A stretch of 63,789 nt of DNA, the filler included, from Olpidium bornovanus S191 (Eukaryota; Fungi; Olpidiomycota): NCBI GenBank assembly GCA_017911155.1. It is 28 parts of 28 records of this genome, joined end to end, with 100 filler letters (N's around TTAATTAATTAA, not from the genome) between each part and the next. Parts side by side here need not be neighbours in the genome. Positions count along the whole stretch, not along the records: positions 4,592 to 8,440 come from JAEFCI010005680.1; 27 more parts are not named here. One strand, written 5' to 3'. The translations under genes and the position numbers were made by a program. How positions within the stretch are numbered: position 1 is the stretch's first letter; every line of letters begins with the position of its first letter. Positions 1,297-8,440 of the stretch are shown here, piece after piece. The notes below the pieces were generated by a model, which was not told the origin of the DNA, searched no databases, and worked only from the letters and a program-made list of their open reading frames with translations.

Positions 1297-2791
1297 ATGG
1301 AGCTGGCGCCCGTCCCGCGCGCAGTGGCTGCCGCCGCAAGGGTCGCCCACGCGGCCGCCGCCGCTGCGGCCGCGGCGGCCGTTCCGCCGGGAGCCGTGAC
1401 GCGGACGCCCCCCGCCCTCAGAGCGTCCGTCGCCCGCCCGCCCCGGACTCGGGCCTTCGCCGCCCGCGCTGCCCCCGCTGCAGGCGCAGCTCGTGGGCAG
1501 GCCGCCGCCGCCGCCGCGCCGGACCGACTCCAGTCCTTCTCGAAACTGCTTGCCGACGGTCCGTCGTTTGCCGACTTTCTGAGCAAGCAGGAGGCGCCGC
1601 TCACACGTGAGGAGGCCTTGGAGCTGAGAGAGACGGTCTCCAGGGAAGCTGCCGCCGCGGATGCTGCTCCGGCCGCCAAGCAGGCGGAGCCCGCGAACAA
1701 GAAAAAGGCGCCGTACGTTTTACCCGTACGCTGTTGGCGCAGCCTTGCCCGTTCCCGCGATGTCTCAGAACCTCTGAGCCGCAACTGCCGCCGGAACCTT
1801 GCAGCGTCGTCCGCCTCCCGCCGTGGCTGAAGACCGAAATCCCGGGCGGCGCCAACTACGCGCGGATAAAGAAGGACCTGCGCGGTCTCAACTTGCACAC
1901 CGTCTGCGAGGAAGCGCGTTGCCCGAACATTGGTGATTGCTGGGGCGGAGGCGCCAACCAGACGGCGACGGCCACCATCATGATAATGGGGGATGAATGC
2001 ACCCGGGGGGGCCGGTTCTGTTCGGTGAAGACCAACAGGACGCCCAAGCCGCTAGACCCGAACGAACCGGAGAACACCGCAGAGGCGATATCCCGATGGG
2101 GTTTGGACTACATCGTGATCACTTCGGTCGACAGGGACGACCTTCCAGACGGCGGCGCCGCGCACTTCGCCTCCACCATCCGGAAAATCAAGGCTAAGTG
2201 GGTGACTCCTTTGTTTGGCCGAATGCTGCCGGCGTGTGTCTGTTGGAGAGCGAACAACGGTTTTACGGTCGGTGAGAACGTTCCGCTCGTCCATTCCCCC
2301 TCCCCTGCCTTTTTTTTTTCTCGCAGAGCAAAGCACATTCTGGTCGAGTGCCTGACCGGTGATTTCCAAGGCGACCTCGACTGTGTCGCGGAGGTGGCCG
2401 GCGCGGGACTAGACGTCTACGCGCACAATGTCGAGACGGTCGAGGCGCTGCAGGGATACGTGCGCGATCGGAGGGCGAACTACCAGCAGTCGCTCTCTGT
2501 TCTCGCTCACGCCAAGAAGGTCCGGCCGGACCTGGTAACGAAAACTTCCATCATGCTGGGGTGCGGCGAGACCGATGACGAGGTTTTGCAGACCTTAAAA
2601 GGTGAACTCGCGCGCCTCCTGAACTGTTCCAAAAGCGTCTAGGCTGTCGACCGGGCCCGTTGCGCCGGCCGGCAGACTATAAACTCGCACCCGCTTCTTT
2701 CGTGAACCTCGCTCAAACCGGTTTTTCGCAATTTTCTTTGCCAGACCTGCGCGCTGTGGGCGTCGACTGCGTCACGCTCGGCCAGTACATG
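1297..2791 (+). CDS. LIP5: Mitochondrial lipoyl synthase (radical SAM), 3' truncated at contig end
   Basis: Motifs [21 protein letters not shown] (CX4CX5C), [41 protein letters not shown] and [16 protein letters not shown]. Introns at 1713-1804, 2198-2326 and about 2602-2744. The Ala/Arg-rich N-terminus resembles a mitochondrial presequence. Confidence 0.97.
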
Positions 2792-2891
2792 NNNNNNNNN
2801 NNNNNNNNNNNNNNNNNNNNNNNNNNNNNNNNNNNTTAATTAATTAANNNNNNNNNNNNNNNNNNNNNNNNNNNNNNNNNNNNNNNNNNNN
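2792..2891. other. Artificial contig spacer (N44-TTAATTAATTAA-N44), first of 27
   Basis: Identical 100-nt spacers start at about 2792, 4492, 8441, 11387, 14289, 18737, 21897, 23912, 26203, 28287, 29694, 31693, 33468, 35189, 36370, 38635, 40207, 43345, 44681, 47846, 49066, 53033, 55302, 57062, 58439, 60120 and 61946. The core gives stop codons in all six frames. Confidence 0.99.
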
Positions 2892-3284
2892 CATGTCCTT
2901 AAAGATCCGGATGGCGTCATAATTGTCGACAAGGAGCGGAATAGGGACAAAAATGATGGACATTCGGGGATGTGTGGTTGTAGCGCCACAATCAAAAAAA
3001 AACAATCTGACAGTTAATCGTGGGATGGTTAATCGTTGCATTGACAGAGGAAATGTTAAGTAAAACGGTTTCACAATTAAGGACGGCATTGACTTGACTA
3101 TTTCGACCCGGAGGCGGCTTCGGTGTCAGAGCTGGCGGTATTTTTCGTCTGGTTCACTTGTGGTTTGGTTGGGACATGGCGGCGTTTGCGGGGACCGCAG
3201 GGGATCGTAAGAGGCGCGGTCGGCGGCGTCCGTAGCAAGCGCGGGGGCATCCAGGGTATCCTGGGGAAGCGCAAGAACTTTGAC

Positions 3285-3415
3285 TGAAGAAGAAAAGCGG
3301 AAAAGGAGGGAGAGAAGCGCACGCGAAGAGAAGCGAGAAAAGAGGGAGAGAAGCGCGCGCGAAGAAAAGCGAGGAAGGAGGGAGAGAAGCGCGCGCGAAG
3401 AGGTGAGAACATACC
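3285..3415. repeat. Minisatellite, about 3-4 imperfect copies of a ~33-36 nt unit (GAGAGAAGCGCGCGCGAAGAAAAGCGA core)
   Basis: Direct inspection; it gives the repeated peptide RERSAREEK in the ORF track. Confidence 0.8.
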
Positions 3416-4267
3416 GGAACGCTGGTTTTTTTTTTTTGTTTTTTTTTTGTTGCCAAGAGCGGCGCGGGGGGGGAAGAATCGCACGCGGGGAAGCGGTGAG
3501 AAGCGCGGCGACTGATTTTTTTTTTTTTTTTTTTTACGTGAAGAAGAGCGGCGCAGGGAGGGTTGGAAGGCGGGCGCGGAGCGCGACAACCGGTTCAACG
3601 AATGCGCGAAGCGCAGGCGGGCGCGTGGGAAAGCGGTCGCAGGGAGTCACGGAAGGGCTCGTAACCTGTTGGTTTTTGGTTTTGATAGATTGAATTAGTA
3701 TATAATATAATGAAGGGGCAAGCCGACTTCGCAGCGGACCCGACCTGCGGCAATGGAGAAAGAAAAGAGTAAGGTTTAGCAGAAGAGATGTATTTAGCAG
3801 AGCAATGGTACGAAAGGCTTAAGATTATGATTAGCATTGGTGTCAGGAACACTCGGAAGTCCGTTCCGGTGAACAGAAACAGAGGATGGCAGGAGGATGA
3901 TGGCATTTGCTTCCCTGAGTAGCATATGACAACAGATCAAGGAAACCAAATCAAGGAGGGGAGCGTGCGCGCCACGGCGGCCGCGGCGGGGAGGGGAGCG
4001 TTATGGGAGGGGGGCGGGGGTTATGGGGAAGGTGGGGGGAGGGGGTGGAGGAGAAGGATGCAACGCTGCTCTCTCTCTCACCACTTACGGCCACTGCTTC
4101 ATCAAGGTGAATCACGAAACCGGCCATGACGACCACCCGACGCTCAGACAATGTGCTCAGAAGAAACTCCTGGAAGCTGCTGCAAATATATACAGCAACC
4201 AGTCCTCCAATTTCCAGCTCTCTCTGTTGCTTCTTGACGAGTGTGGAACACTGGGAAGATTTCATAC

Positions 4268-4452: not shown

Positions 4453-5189
4453 GGTTCGGGAATAACATCAAATCTTACCTTTAGTTACGCANNNNNNNNN
4501 NNNNNNNNNNNNNNNNNNNNNNNNNNNNNNNNNNNTTAATTAATTAANNNNNNNNNNNNNNNNNNNNNNNNNNNNNNNNNNNNNNNNNNNNAGGTTTTTC
4601 CGGGGTAAGGATCAGGGGTAACCCTGGCGCTATCTCTGAGGGAGCGAAGCTCGACGAGGTGTGGTTAATTTCTTGTGTTGCAGCCGGACTTTGGCATTTT
4701 CCGAGTTCCATGAGTGCCATTCCGGATTCGCAACATGGTATTCCGAGATCCCGTTGCCAGGGTAACCAATCAGCCACCGGGCCCAGCCCCAGTCTGGCCC
4801 CGGTCCAGCTAAAGTCTCCCATTGGCCCGTCTTTAATTTTTTCATTTATTATCTTGCCCTCCGCTCCCCGTTCGCCCCGCCTCGTTTCATTTACATCCCC
4901 ACCCTCTTCGTAGTTCACTCTGTAGTTTCCTCTGTACATAAATAGCCGGTCTTAGCCGACTTTAGTTAGTTTCTTTCCCCACAAAATCCACTCTTGTACT
5001 CTAGTTAACCCAATATTTCCTAAAGAGGGCGCCAGAGGAAGCCCATCAATGGGTTTATGGCTTATCGAAGGGCCACGTGACATTGAGGGGGACACCCATT
5101 ACAGATTTCAGGGTAGTCAAGTTTCTCCCGTGTCACCAATTCTTTTGTCGGCCATGAGACGGTCAATTCAGGCTCCGTGGTGGTCAGGT

Positions 5190-5800
5190 CACGAGTTGGA
5201 CGGTTTAGGCAGGCTGGGCAGGCTTCCGAATCGTTGCCAGTCAATTATTGGGTTACACTCCTGCGACCAGGAGGTTTCCAAGATGAGGTCGTGCTTGATG
5301 GCGGGAGTCACGACGAACGACGTCTTCGAGGATTATGCTCGCCCCGCCTGGTCGCAAAGAGAGAGCTAGCCTTGGCGGGGTTGGCCGCTAACGCGATTGC
5401 CCGCGAAATGCAGCCGGGTTGGCGAGTATACATGTGAAAGTCTGCGGGCCAGCCAGTAGTTTATGAGGTTCAGACTCTGTTTATGAGGATTCCCCTGAGT
5501 TGAGGAGCCCCTGTATGAAGGGTACGTCTCCCTCCGCTGGCTGAGGGCCGGCAGTGGTCGAGTACCGCTGGCGATCGTTTCATGTTTGGCTTCTTCTTGA
5601 GGCGGGCCTGTTGGGGGGGCTCGGTACTCCCCCGCGGTGAAGTTCCCAATTGGCGCCGGGCCGTCGCCACCACTAGTGTTTTGAGGAACGCGGAATTTTC
5701 CGCTTTTTGGAACACGTGCCCCCGGCCATCCGAGCCCACGGCTGGCGTGACCGGCGCTCAGGACACAACTCTCCTGCAGCCAAAAAGACGTGAACAAAGA
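5190..5800 (-). mobile_element. Degenerate Ty3/gypsy gag-protease remnant
   Basis: Minus-strand SFVVTPAIKHDLILETSWSQECNPIIDWQ matches the retropepsin C-terminal pattern (F.V....DLILG.PWL...NP.IDW). Upstream is a DGPAP gag-like motif. Frameshifted. Confidence 0.55.
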
Positions 5801-6504
5801 CTCCTTAGTGGAGCACATCCGCGTCCTCAATGAGCGAAACAATGGTGCCTGCCGGGAAGTTCAATTTCATGCTGGTAAAACACCAGGTTTTTCAAAAACA
5901 GCGCAGGCTCGTTCACCCGCGGCGTGAATGTGTCCGTCCGTGGTTTTCCCGTTGACAAAATTACGCGTCCGCTTACAATCATTCCGACAGCATGTTACCA
6001 GATGAAACGGCTCGGGGAAGGTTGGTGGACGCTTTGGGCTTTGCCGCCCGGAGTGGCCATTACCAGGCTGCGACTACAGAAGCAGCGCGACGCAAGGGTT
6101 TGTGTTTGTGTCGTGGTCTGAAATGGGATGATGCCTTTCTTTTTTTTTTCCCGTCGTCGCAGACCGAAACAAGCGTGACCAACCAGGCCCTGCAGAAAAT
6201 CAACCAGGACCTGCGCAAGAAAAATAAAAGCAGCGAGAGAGCTGCTGGGTGGCGAGCATGTAGATCTGCGGCCGAACGGAATGCGTCGCAGCCGCGTGCA
6301 AACAGGTAGCGAAAAAGGCCGCCCAAAAAATTCAAGTCTGCCACTGGCGGGAACAGAATGCGCCATTTATACCGGCCCCCCCCCCCCACCCCCCCCCATT
6401 TCATTTCTTCCCAAGAAAAAAATCTATATCGCTTTCCGTTTCAGTTTCCTGCAACATACTTTCTTTAAATCTTATAATTGAATATATTATACTTATTGGA
6501 TTAT

Positions 6505-6800
6505 TGGCGTTACTAATGAAGCTCCTGTTTTGAGAGATTTTGATCTTGAACCGCGTTTCCTTAACAAATCGGTTGGCCTTTTGGTGAAATCCGTCCTAAC
6601 CCGGCAGCGCACCGGCCTGCTCGTTTTGCCAGCCGCCTCACTTGGCGTAAGCTCGGAATGCCTGGCCGTTTTCTGCTCCCGGTGGTCCTGCGTCCTCGCG
6701 CTTTCACGGATGCGTTTCCGATGCAGCCGCGCTAAGCGTGCCAAAATTCAGCCGAAGGATATTCAACTTGCAAAACCGCCTGCGCGGGGAGCACCTGAAC
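6505..6800 (+). pseudogene. Decayed histone H3-like fragment
   Basis: [16 protein letters not shown], then after a frameshift RLRGE, resembles the H3 C-terminus [21 protein letters not shown]. Upstream RDFDLEPRFLNKSVGLLVKS aligns without gaps to QDFKTDLRFQSSAIGALQES. A GTAAG...CAG intron lies between them. Stops and frameshifts are present. Confidence 0.4.
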
Positions 6801-7088
6801 GAGAGCAAAGATGCCTCGAGCGCAAGTTTCCGCTCGAGAATTGCTGGGAGAGGCTGGGCCTCCTGCGACTCTGATCTAAAGATGCCTTGATTTGCCAATT
6901 TCCGTTTGGTAAGTGAGGCTTGGAAAGGAGGGTGCGCCTTTTGTGACACGTTCCATTCGCATATTGACTTAAATGGCGTATGCACTACAAGCATGTTCTC
7001 GCGTGTGACCCCTCATCACAAGGCAGCGCAACGGCCGACAGTTTTTTTAATTATTTGGTTGTTTTTTTTCGCTTTTTTTTTTTGTTAT

Positions 7089-7243
7089 TGTTGTGAACCG
7101 AAAGAGTACGCTCTACGGTCACGTGATCAAAGATGCCAAGACCGGGAGGGGAGCTCCCCCTGGAGCTCTTCCTCCCGCCGTCAAACGCAAACAACGGAAG
7201 AGAAGAAGGGAACGGAGAGAGAGACCCCCCCCTTTTCGCAACA
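7089..7243 (+). mobile_element. 5' LTR (155 bp) of a Ty1/copia retrotransposon
   Basis: Begins TGTTGTGAA and ends TTCGCAACA (8/9 inverted terminal match, TG...CA). It is followed directly by a PBS and then gag. Predicted 5-bp TSD is GTTAT (7084-7088). Confidence 0.85.
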
Positions 7244-7257
7244 CGTTATCAGCACCA
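7244..7257 (+). promoter_or_regulatory. Primer binding site complementary to the anticodon arm of tRNA-Ile(IAU) (half-tRNA priming)
   Basis: CGTTATCAGCACCA is the reverse complement of TGGTGCT[I]ATAACG in the eukaryotic tRNA-Ile(AAU) anticodon arm, with an inosine:C pair. It abuts the LTR end. Confidence 0.8.
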
Positions 7258-7645
7258 TTTGCTCCTGCTCTCTCCCTTCGCCGCCGACGCCGCCACCGCC
7301 GTTGCGCTCCGCCACCGCCGTTGTGCTCCGCCCCCGCCGTTGCACTCCGCCGCCGCCGTTGCGCTCCGCCACCGCCGTCGCCGCTGCGCACCACGCCACC
7401 GCCGCTGCCGCCGCTGCCGCCGTTCGCCGCCGCTTCGCCGCTGCGCGCCACGCCGCCGCCGCCGCGTCGACCGTCGCGCTCGCCGAGACCGCCACTCGTT
7501 CTGCTTCGCGCCACACAAGCTCGCCCCGTTCGCGCCACACAAGCAGTCGCTCGTCGCTGCCACTGTCGCGAACACCATCACCCGTTCGCGTCAACCACAC
7601 CCACCGTCTCGCCCGCCGAGAAGAGAAGCCCTCCCCGCGCCGCCC

Positions 7646-8440
7646 ATGGACAACAAGAAGGTTTCGCTCGAATTCGAGCCCCTTGCGGCTGACAGGGAGA
7701 ACTACCTCCTCTGGGCCGTCCAAGCCCGGAACCTCCTTGTCGCGAACGAGGTGGACGTCGCAGTTGCCATGGACGACACCCCTGCCCAGCAGGCCAAGGC
7801 TGCCGAGTGCTCCCAGGCCATGCGCGCGAAGGCCATTAGCTACCTTTGGAGGCATATGGCACGCCCTTTGCTTGACCAATACGTCCTCAAACATAACCCC
7901 GCTGCGTTATGGAAAGCTTTGGCGGGACGTTTTAATAACCAACAGGTCCTGCTCTTGCCGCGCGCACAGGACTCATGGATGACCCTGCGAGTCCTCGACT
8001 ACCCGTCGATCGCCTCGTACGATGCCAAGCTCCACAGCATTGTTGCCCAGTTGCGCCTCTGCGGTGAGTCCGTATCGGAGGCGCAAATGATTCAGAAGAC
8101 CCTCTCCACCATGCCGGTGGCCTCGGCCGTGTTGGCTCAGCAAATGCGCAATATGGCCTTCCAGAGTTATGATGCGCTCATGACTCACCTCCGCCTAGTG
8201 GAGCGGAACCATGAGCTTTTGCTCAGCAATGCGGAACGCCGTCCTGCGGGGGCAGCGGCTCCCAAGGAGGCACACCATGCTGCTGCGCGCAGTAAAGGCA
8301 GGGACCGGATCAACAAGGGCAAGGGCAAGGGCAAGGGACAGGGTAAGGGCAACGGAGGGCCCAAACCTACTGGTGCGGCGCCCGCCGGAGCCTGGGGTGC
8401 CCAGAAGCGTACGCGTTACGTGGAGGGCCGCACCTGCAAA
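7646..8440 (+). mobile_element. Ty1/copia Gag (UBN2/Retrotran_gag_2-like), Bianca-like; uninterrupted, runs off contig end
   Basis: LEFEPLAADRENYLLW, RAKAISYLWRHM, NPAALWKALAGRF, LLPRAQDSWMTLRVLDYPSIASY, IVAQLRLCGESVSEAQMIQKTLST, FQSYDALMTHLRLVERNHELLLSNAERRPAG, then a GKG-rich linker ending at CK (likely the start of a zinc knuckle). Confidence 0.88.

What the first reader, a model, noticed from the sequence alone, without database searches (positions are those of the whole stretch)
7089..8440. Plant Bianca-like Ty1/copia retrotransposon with a half-tRNA-Ile primer site in a zoosporic fungal genome
Seen: a 155-bp LTR (TGTTG...CAACA), an abutting PBS CGTTATCAGCACCA, a GCC-rich leader and an uninterrupted Gag, so the element looks young. 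Established: CGTTATCAGCAC pairs with the anticodon arm of tRNA-Ile(IAU), which means priming by a cleaved half-tRNA rather than the 3' CCA end. The junction ...ACA-CGTTATCAGCAC and short LTRs are hallmarks of the land-plant Bianca copia lineage. From memory, the Gag aligns block by block with plant Bianca Gag (LEFxALDxxGxNYLSW; RAKAMIFLRHH; DPxxLWxxLxxR; LPxARYDWxxLRLQDFKSVxEYNS; ITSQLKLCG; LEKTFSTF; LLVAEQNNELLMKNHExRPTG). The high GC and the flanking poly-T tracts match this genome, which argues for integration rather than plant DNA carry-over. Inference: horizontal transfer between plants and a root-associated zoosporic fungus, or an unrecognised ancient fungal sister lineage of Bianca. The I:C pairing in the PBS also implies priming by the ADAT-edited tRNA.
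Basis: partly seen in the sequence, partly recalled or inferred. Interest (0 to 1): 0.85.

Follow-up and report, generated by a model that had tools for sequence, protein, structure and literature searches.

The report
Plant-type copia retrotransposon in Olpidium
This is the front end of a jumping gene of the plant "Bianca" type, primed by half of an isoleucine tRNA. It sits on a contig assigned to the root-infecting zoosporic fungus Olpidium bornovanus, which hints at an old plant-to-fungus transfer but does not prove one.

Summary
Window 7089-7243 is a 155-bp LTR (TGTTG...CAACA). CGTTATCAGCACCA abuts it at 7244-7257, followed by a 388-nt, 75% GC leader and an open copia Gag that starts at 7646 and is cut by the contig edge.

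The piece is contig JAEFCI010005680.1 of the O. bornovanus assembly. A second, diverged and defective copy lies on another contig of that assembly, with homology starting exactly at TGTTG. Public runs hold near-identical copies with different flanks, so this is a multi-copy family.

The 12-mer CGTTATCAGCAC sits directly after the LTR in an Ipomoea element, in bryophyte-type elements and in both Olpidium copies. Neumann et al. 2019 describe this as the Bianca half-tRNA-Ile (I34) primer site.

All named Gag relatives are land plants. In trees the Olpidium pair joins a clade that holds a moss element, not the angiosperm Bianca clade. The root is not resolved.

Cucumber carry-over is very unlikely. 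However, the assembly is a composition-binned metagenome, the contig carries no fungal marker gene, and no RT is available. Both the host and the transfer therefore remain inferences. Identical 14-mer primer sites also occur in unrelated environmental copia families.

The parts
4592..7083 (.). Flank upstream of the insertion. It has 53% GC and homopolymer tracts, and no recognisable gene or RNA.
   Evidence: No Pfam family for 8 ORFs. No Rfam match. GC figure. Stretch 6708-6911 occurs with 0 differences in a soil metagenome, X7.
7084..7088 (.). Candidate 5-bp target-site duplication half (GTTAT). It cannot be verified because the 3' end of the element is off the contig.
   Evidence: These are the five bases before the LTR start. 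The Ipomoea relative has a verified 5-bp TSD, GAAAT. Bianca TSDs are 5 bp in 96% of elements.
7089..7243 (+). 5' LTR, 155 bp, with terminal inverted repeat TGTTGTGAA / TTCGCAACA.
   Evidence: Homology with L004 644-779 begins at TGTTG, with 122 of 135 positions identical. Loose ends lie 'before 7089' in 5 contigs of X3 and 1 of X5. The termini match Ipomoea L011.
7244..7257 (+). Primer binding site CGTTATCAGCACCA. It is complementary to the anticodon arm (about nt 27-40) of tRNA-Ile(IAU). The C at 7250 lies opposite inosine 34.
   Evidence: The 12-mer is identical and LTR-abutting in L001, L003, L004, L006-L009 and L011-L012. Neumann 2019 reports Bianca as half-tRNA-Ile with I34. Chance expectation is 0.01.
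7258..7645 (+). 5' leader, 75% GC, GCC-rich, with 19-bp tandem repeats at 7290-7384 and a 16-bp exact repeat at 7505/7529.
   Evidence: Repeats, composition. L004 has a comparable GCC-rich leader.
7646..8440 (+). gag (Ty1/copia capsid protein). 265 codons are open and the frame is cut by the contig edge at the first Cys of the expected CCHC knuckle.
   Evidence: Pfam PF14223 E 3.2e-9. 731 relatives at E<=0.001, best 2e-42. 52.7% identity to Olpidium KAG5457091.1, 40-46% to bryophyte-type Gag and about 35% to angiosperm Gag.

Best explanation
Window 7089-8440 is the 5' part (5' LTR, primer binding site, leader, gag) of a Ty1/copia LTR retrotransposon of the Bianca kind.

Mechanism, inferred by analogy with copia/Ty5-type half-tRNA priming and from what Neumann et al. 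propose for Bianca. The element RNA anneals through the 14 nt directly after U5 to the 3' end of a 5' half of tRNA-Ile(IAU). That half is cleaved in the 3' strand of the anticodon stem, near nt 40. Inosine 34 pairs with the C at 7250. Reverse transcriptase then extends this half-tRNA into the LTR to make minus-strand strong-stop DNA. Gag is translated from 7646 after a long GC-rich leader. In relatives, protease-integrase-RT-RNase H follow in a separate reading frame or after a stop.

The element belongs to a multi-copy, internally diverged family in the GC-rich eukaryote that was binned as Olpidium bornovanus. Its sequence composition has shifted far from that of all plant relatives. Most likely the family entered that lineage by an old horizontal transfer from a land-plant lineage of the bryophyte type, and it has since been propagating there.
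For: Element anatomy and boundaries.

Bianca-type features:
- Identical LTR termini and identical 12-nt primer site in a complete Ipomoea element with TSD and PPT, in bryophyte-type elements, and in both Olpidium copies.
- The literature gives half-tRNA-Ile(I34) as the Bianca hallmark, with a GAG:_:PROT-INT-RT-RH layout.
- All named Gag relatives are land plants, apart from one Olpidium protein.

Host:
- The contig is JAEFCI010005680.1 of GCA_017911155.1.
- A second copy lies on JAEFCI010010652.1.
- Gag GC3 is 0.73, against 0.31-0.56 in the plant copies.
- No relative above 53% identity exists in any named plant, so this is not cucumber DNA.
- Both Olpidium copies share ...GCACCATT after the core primer site. 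Three of the four plant and bryophyte families have G at that position and the fourth (L003) has A.

Phylogeny:
- The Olpidium pair (100/98*) plus the moss-containing clade form one split (99/96*), apart from angiosperm Bianca.
- That clade holds a Ceratodon purpureus protein and a contig whose eEF1A is 96% identical to that of a liverwort.
- A related group that lacks this primer site roots the tree outside both clades.
Against: - The Olpidium assembly is a composition-binned metagenome from non-axenic zoospores washed off cucumber roots.
- The contig has no fungal marker gene. Its unique flank is missing from the runs that hold the element. A GC-rich alga or protist host is therefore not excluded.
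- No RT, RH or INT of this family from this genome was available, so the formal lineage assignment is untested.
- AU tests do not reject Olpidium outside all plant sequences (p 0.33) or with angiosperms (p 0.12). The Gag composition is deviant, which can distort trees.
- Most members of the 'bryophyte-type' clade are unnamed metagenome sequences.
- Priming by a tRNA-Ile half has not been shown experimentally here.
- The host tRNA-Ile sequence could not be obtained.
Confidence: 0.5

Rival explanations
1. Mis-binned contig. The element is real and Bianca-like, but its host is another GC-rich eukaryote from the non-axenic zoospore wash, for example a green alga or other member of the green lineage, or a protist. 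In a green-lineage host it would be an ordinary vertically inherited relative of land-plant Bianca, and no cross-kingdom transfer would be needed.
For: - The assembly was made by tetranucleotide binning of a 187-Mb mixed assembly, and contigs without any hit were kept.
- Both contigs that carry the family hold only transposon sequence.
- The tree position, outside angiosperms and beside bryophytes, is what a non-vascular green-lineage host would give.
- The unique flank is absent from runs X1 and X3, which hold the element.
Against: - The element occurs in five runs from two studies labelled as one much-studied organism, and in another organism's run. This fits a common root endoparasite better than a stray alga.
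- No named algal relative appeared among the looked-up hits.
- The primer-site extension differs from that of plants and bryophytes.
Confidence: 0.25
2. Old vertical lineage. A Bianca-like copia lineage with half-tRNA-Ile priming predates the plant-fungus split, or is at least old in fungi. It survives in Olpidium, and there was no horizontal transfer.
For: - AU does not reject Olpidium outside all plant sequences (p 0.33).
- The two Olpidium subfamilies are deeply diverged, with Gag about 50% identical.
- Half-tRNA-Ile primer sites occur in several unrelated environmental copia families, so the priming mode is wider than Bianca.
Against: - No other fungus appeared among the named relatives in searches of 1.8 and 5.8 billion proteins.
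- With the primer-site-lacking group as outgroup, Olpidium is nested beside the bryophyte-type clade.
- This scenario would need losses in nearly all fungi, animals and protists.
Confidence: 0.12
3. Carry-over of cucumber (culture host) DNA into the assembly.
For: The fungus was grown on cucumber roots and the preparation was mixed. All named Gag relatives are plants.
Against: - The best named plant match is only 33-37% identical, and no Cucumis protein was found.
- Gag GC3 is 0.73 and the leader is 75% GC, against 33% GC for a dicot Bianca locus.
- Two deeply diverged subfamilies share the same GC-rich style.
Confidence: 0.02

Closest known systems
Bianca lineage of plant Ty1/copia retrotransposons (Wicker & Keller 2007; REXdb, Neumann et al. 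2019)
   Same: - The primer site is complementary to the edited 5' half of tRNA-Ile and abuts the LTR.
- The LTR is short, with TGTTG...CAACA termini.
- The Gag is homologous (E 1e-34 and better), and its relatives are Gag-only ORFs.
- A long leader lies between the primer site and gag.
- A stop separates gag from protease in the sister copy L004.
   Different: - The host is assigned to a zoosporic fungus, not a land plant.
- Gag is only about 35% identical to angiosperm Bianca and lies outside that clade, beside bryophyte-type elements.
- Primer-site positions 13-14 are CA rather than G(A/C).
- GC3 is 0.73, with a GCC-repeat leader.
- At 155 bp, the LTR is shorter than in the relatives examined (231-357 bp).
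- RT/RH/INT, the formal criterion, was not available.
Bryophyte-type Bianca-like elements (Ceratodon purpureus KAG0605124.1; metagenome loci L001, L002, L005, L006-L009)
   Same: - They are the closest Gag relatives (40-46% identity) and share one supported split with the Olpidium pair.
- They have the same 12-nt primer site and LTR ends in ...AACA.
- They have separate gag and pol ORFs.
   Different: - They are AT-rich to moderate in GC (39-47%).
- The primer site continues with G.
- The leaders are of a different kind.
- The Olpidium pair is sister to them, not inside them.
Half-tRNA-primed copia elements (Drosophila copia, yeast Ty5, Volvox Osser; genus Hemivirus)
   Same: The primer site is complementary to an internal part of a tRNA (the anticodon arm), not to its 3' CCA end, and it starts directly after the LTR. 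This implies a cleaved 5' tRNA half as primer. This comparison rests on established knowledge, not on a test made here.
   Different: Those elements use initiator tRNA-Met. This one uses tRNA-Ile(IAU) with an I:C pair. No Gag similarity to them was examined.

Membership tests
Bianca (Ty1/copia lineage, REXdb) | Primer binding site complementary to the A34-to-I edited half-tRNA-Ile, directly after the 5' LTR | tested here: met
   CGTTATCAGCAC at 7244-7255 is identical to the LTR-abutting site of a complete Ipomoea nil element and of bryophyte-type elements. Neumann 2019 reports this site type in 92% of Bianca elements. The tRNA itself was not retrieved by a tool.
Bianca (Ty1/copia lineage, REXdb) | RT, RNase H and integrase domains cluster with Bianca in phylogenies | not testable with these tools
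   The contig ends inside gag. The only other copy (L004) breaks off at the protease. A metagenome scan with the Gag found no close relative.
Bianca (Ty1/copia lineage, REXdb) | Gag homologous to Bianca Gag | tested here: met
   E 1e-34 to Ipomoea and Euphorbia Gag-only proteins. The Ipomoea protein sits in an element with the Bianca primer site. However, the tree places the Olpidium Gag outside the angiosperm clade.
Bianca (Ty1/copia lineage, REXdb) | Gag ORF separated from the PROT-INT-RT-RH ORF (GAG:_:PROT-INT-RT-RH) | tested here: inconclusive
   The window is cut before the end of gag. In L004, gag is followed by one in-frame stop and then the protease motif DSG, but that copy is defective. 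Relatives L001, L005 and L011 have separate ORFs.
Bianca (Ty1/copia lineage, REXdb) | 5-bp target-site duplication | tested here: inconclusive
   Only the 5' side (GTTAT, 7084-7088) is on the contig.
Bianca (Ty1/copia lineage, REXdb) | Host is a land plant (the range in which the lineage was defined) | tested here: not met
   The contig belongs to the Olpidium bornovanus assembly GCA_017911155.1. No named plant has a close copy. The host assignment itself rests on binning.
Ty1/copia (Pseudoviridae) | Copia-type Gag, and integrase before reverse transcriptase | tested here: met
   PF14223 E 3.2e-9. The domain order was seen only in relatives L001 and L005, as rve/gag_pre-integrs before RVT_2, not in the window.
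Half-tRNA-primed (hemivirus-like) elements | A cleaved 5' tRNA half serves as the primer | not testable with these tools
   Only the sequence complementarity and the position of the site are shown. Cleavage and priming need small-RNA or cDNA data.

The most novel reading that the evidence does not exclude
A Bianca-type retrotransposon crossed from a land plant (bryophyte-type lineage) into the lineage of the root endoparasite Olpidium. There it re-tuned the outer two bases of its primer site to the fungal tRNA-Ile, shifted to the host's GC-rich composition, and diversified into subfamilies that are still active. This would be a documented plant-to-fungus transfer of an LTR retrotransposon lineage along a parasitic interface.
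Probability: 0.35. Interest if true: 0.75.

Novelty: new member of a known kind. Interest (0 to 1): 0.5.

Why it matters
Bianca and its edited half-tRNA-Ile primer site have been described only in plants. A resident, diversified family in a zoosporic root parasite would extend the lineage across kingdoms. It would also give a concrete case for testing retrotransposon transfer at a plant-parasite interface, including whether a primer site adapts to a new host's tRNA.

Olpidium sits at a key node of fungal phylogeny and its only genome is a binned metagenome. The finding therefore also flags that transposon-only contigs in that assembly need a host check.

The side result has independent value. 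Several unrelated environmental copia families carry the same 14-nt half-tRNA-Ile site, so this priming mode is wider than the plant literature suggests.

Tried and rejected
- ARAGORN found no tRNA in the piece and no tRNA-Ile in any fetched locus. The host tRNA-Ile could therefore not be compared. What I say about positions 27-28 of plant versus other tRNA-Ile rests on memory and on the primer-site patterns, not on a tool.
- A metagenome scan with the Gag protein found no close relative, so the full element, RT and 3' LTR were not recovered.
- The RNase H fragment on L004 (2984-3430, minus strand) belongs to another copia and is only 31% identical to a bryophyte-type pol. It was of no use for classification.
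- Rooting the Gag tree with very distant copia Gags (L111, L088) gave a branch about 7 long. I do not rely on it alone.
- AU tests were indecisive.
- Pfam on flank ORFs and Rfam gave nothing. The bacterial promoter/terminator scan is not relevant to a eukaryote.
- The ESM Atlas look-up only repeated 'copia Gag, mostly Streptophyta'.
- Cluster look-ups of 10 further clade members gave no names.
- Organism names of the sequencing runs are coded, so I could not tell whether organisms A and B are a crop, Olpidium or something else.
- The TGTT/AACA paper (PMC5659011) concerns the Ale lineage and is not relevant.
- Cucumber carry-over was rejected on identity and composition.

Full report
WHAT IS THERE

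The piece (window 4592-8440) is identical to contig JAEFCI010005680.1 (3849 bp) of assembly GCA_017911155.1, Olpidium bornovanus.

From 7089 to 7243 lies a 155-bp LTR with the terminal inverted repeat TGTTGTGAA...TTCGCAACA. CGTTATCAGCACCA follows directly at 7244-7257. A match to its 12-nt core with at most one mismatch is expected 0.01 times by chance in the window.

Next comes a 388-nt leader of 75% GC with 19-bp tandem repeats at 7290-7384. From ATG 7646 an open frame of 265 codons runs to the contig edge. That frame is a copia-type Gag (Pfam PF14223, E 3.2e-9). It stops at the first Cys of the expected CCHC knuckle, as comparison with the sister copy shows.

The gene caller's longer product, which starts at 7133, is an open frame through the GC-rich LTR and leader. 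Homologs align from residue 1-8 of the 7646 start.

BOUNDARIES AND COPY NUMBER

A second contig of the same assembly (L004 = JAEFCI010010652.1, protein KAG5457091.1) carries a diverged copy. Homology starts exactly at TGTTG and covers the LTR, with 122 of 135 positions identical. It continues through the primer site plus ...CATT, while the upstream flanks are unrelated.

That copy is defective. Its gag has a frameshift, a single in-frame stop precedes the protease motif, and the element is truncated at about 2640. There it abuts the RNase H end of another copia in the opposite orientation.

Contigs of public runs from two coded organisms and from metagenomes cover the LTR and gag at 90-100% identity. 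In run X3, five contigs leave the window exactly before 7089 into different sequences. The LTR start is therefore confirmed independently, and the family is multi-copy with near-identical members elsewhere.

The unique flank 4721-7042 is mostly absent from those runs. Stretch 6708-6911 occurs without a difference in a soil metagenome. The flank has no recognisable gene or RNA.

THE PRIMER SITE

Neumann et al. 2019 state that Bianca elements, alone among plant copia lineages, have primer sites complementary to a half tRNA-Ile whose A34 is edited to inosine. The share is 92% of 260 elements. They also report 5-bp duplications, a mean length of 6.1 kb, and a Gag ORF separated from the PROT-INT-RT-RH ORF.

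I fetched the locus of an Ipomoea nil Gag relative. It is a complete element with the following features:
- LTRs of 231 bp with TGTTG...CAACA termini
- a 5-bp duplication, GAAAT
- a polypurine tract
- the site CGTTATCAGCACGC directly after the LTR
- separate gag and pol ORFs

The same 12-mer sits directly after ...A(A/T)(C/T)A in every relative whose 5' end was available. These are the near-complete metagenome element L001, then L003, L006-L009, and both Olpidium copies.

The I:C pairing point is already published. Actual priming by a cleaved tRNA half is inferred, not shown.

After the 12-mer, three of the four plant and bryophyte families continue with G and the fourth (L003) with A. Both Olpidium copies continue with CCATT. 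From memory, plant tRNA-Ile(AAU) has C28 and some other eukaryotes have G28. If that is right, the Olpidium copies would be tuned to a non-plant tRNA. I could not retrieve the host tRNA-Ile, so this is a prediction.

RELATIVES AND PHYLOGENY

An exhaustive HMMER search found 731 relatives of the Gag at E<=0.001, mostly Gag-only proteins of 200-350 residues. A profile search returned about 100 more. Every named one was an angiosperm. The only non-plant name among the proteins I looked up was the Olpidium protein.

Gag identity to the window is as follows:
- 52.7% to the second Olpidium copy
- 40-46% to a group of mostly environmental sequences
- about 35% to angiosperms, which are 52-62% identical among themselves, monocots included

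The environmental group contains a Ceratodon purpureus (moss) protein. It also contains a contig whose eEF1A is 96% identical to that of a liverwort, 93% to angiosperms and about 75% to fungi and animals. I therefore call the group bryophyte-type, with the caveat that most of its members are unnamed.

In maximum-likelihood trees the Olpidium pair (100/98*) and this group form one split (99/96*), apart from the angiosperm Bianca clade (100/99*). A further group has Bianca-like Gag fused to pol and lacks the tRNA-Ile site in the fetched loci. It falls nearest the root when distant copia Gags are added, and it is a reasonable outgroup. With that rooting, Olpidium is sister to the bryophyte-type clade and nested among plant lineages.

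The support is limited. AU tests do not reject Olpidium outside all plant rows (p 0.33) or with angiosperms (p 0.12). The window's Gag also has a deviant amino-acid composition. A recent transfer from an angiosperm host can be set aside. An old transfer, or a transfer from an unsampled green lineage, is the best fit but is not proven.

WHOSE GENOME?

The Olpidium assembly was made from non-axenic zoospores washed off cucumber roots grown in sand. It was binned by tetranucleotide composition from a 187-Mb mixed assembly, and contigs were removed only if their best hit was non-fungal and they lacked a strong fungal hit. Transposon-only contigs such as these two carry no marker, so their assignment is by composition alone.

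Cucumber DNA is very unlikely for three reasons:
- No named plant protein exceeds 37% identity.
- Gag GC3 is 0.73, against 0.31-0.56 in the plant and bryophyte copies.
- The leaders of both copies are GCC-rich.

A different GC-rich eukaryote in the wash, such as a green alga, is not excluded. In that case the element could be a vertical relative of plant Bianca. Against this, the family turns up in five runs from two studies labelled as one heavily sequenced organism, and in a 2012 run of another organism. That fits a widespread root endoparasite. The names are coded, however, so I cannot verify it. I put about 0.7 on an Olpidium host.

SIDE RESULT

It nevertheless recovered at least six copia families in which an LTR end is followed by the identical 14-mer: L054, L068, L088, L092/L102, L111 and L126. 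Copia Gag or RT lies downstream in L068, L088, L111 and L126. In L054 the RT lies upstream of the site, and no coding hit was found in L092/L102.

The Gag of L111 has no BLASTP similarity to the window's Gag, and tblastn with the window Gag found none in any scanned locus. The pols are 23-28% identical to a bryophyte-type pol.

Identical 14-mers in unrelated elements point to a common tRNA template. Half-tRNA-Ile priming is thus not confined to Bianca, and the site alone cannot assign an element to Bianca outside plants. Here the Gag homology carries the assignment.

VERDICT

The formal RT/RH/INT criterion is untested. The fungal host and the horizontal transfer are plausible but unproven.

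I found no paper on retrotransposons of Olpidium and none on Bianca outside plants. This is a new member of a known kind in an unexpected host, of moderate interest. The interest would rise if host linkage and an RT phylogeny confirm a cross-kingdom transfer.

Noticed in passing
L054 1889; L068 (minus strand) 142 and 5210; L088 550; L092/L102 (minus strand); L111 277; L126 (minus strand) 130 (oriented coordinates): At least six copia families in metagenome contigs carry an LTR end followed by the identical 14-mer CGTTATCAGCACCA. Their Gag and pol are unrelated or only distantly related to Bianca. In L088 and L126 the gag ATG follows or overlaps the site. L111 has TGTTG...CAACA LTR termini and Gag GC3 of 0.79. 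Half-tRNA-Ile priming seems wider than the plant Bianca lineage.
   Followed up: partly
L004 644-779 versus window 7089-7243: The LTRs of the two Olpidium copies are about 90% identical, whereas their Gag proteins are only about 50% identical and the leaders barely align. This points to strong constraint on the short LTR or to LTR exchange between subfamilies.
   Followed up: partly
L004 1440-1510, about 2400, 2640-3430: The second Olpidium copy is defective. Its gag has a frameshift, one in-frame stop lies between gag and the protease motif (next to a small palindromic duplication), and the element is truncated at about 2640. It abuts the RNase H end (with an internal stop) of a different copia on the minus strand, so the contig is a nest of transposons.
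   Followed up: yes
window 4615-4652: A segment of about 40 nt at the contig start has very high depth in runs X3 (about 3600) and X1 (about 160), with unrelated sequence on both sides in those runs. It is a short high-copy or highly expressed motif of unknown nature, with no Rfam match.
   Followed up: no
window 4727-4755: TTCGCAACA-TGGTATTCCGAGATCC resembles the LTR end of the element (TTCGCAACA) followed by a TGG-initiated stretch, like a 3'-CCA-type primer site. It may be the end of another LTR cut by the contig edge, or it may be chance.
   Followed up: no
L001 379-1460: The 1.1-kb AT-rich leader of this bryophyte-type element contains about ten copies of the motif (T)ACTAAC, which is the yeast branch-point consensus, between AT microsatellites. 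Its meaning is unknown.
   Followed up: no
L134 1784-8379, L135, L136: A related group has Bianca-like Gag fused to pol in one ORF of 1004-1438 residues and a lysine/glutamate-rich extra ORF just upstream of gag. It is assembled as a tandem or circular unit of about 5.3 kb and has no tRNA-Ile primer site in the fetched DNA. Its host is unknown.
   Followed up: partly
window 6378-6396, 7062-7083; L004 1-29, 213-228: Long homopolymer tracts (C11AC8, T8CGCT11, T29) lie in the flanks of both Olpidium contigs. This shared style is consistent with one source genome.
   Followed up: no
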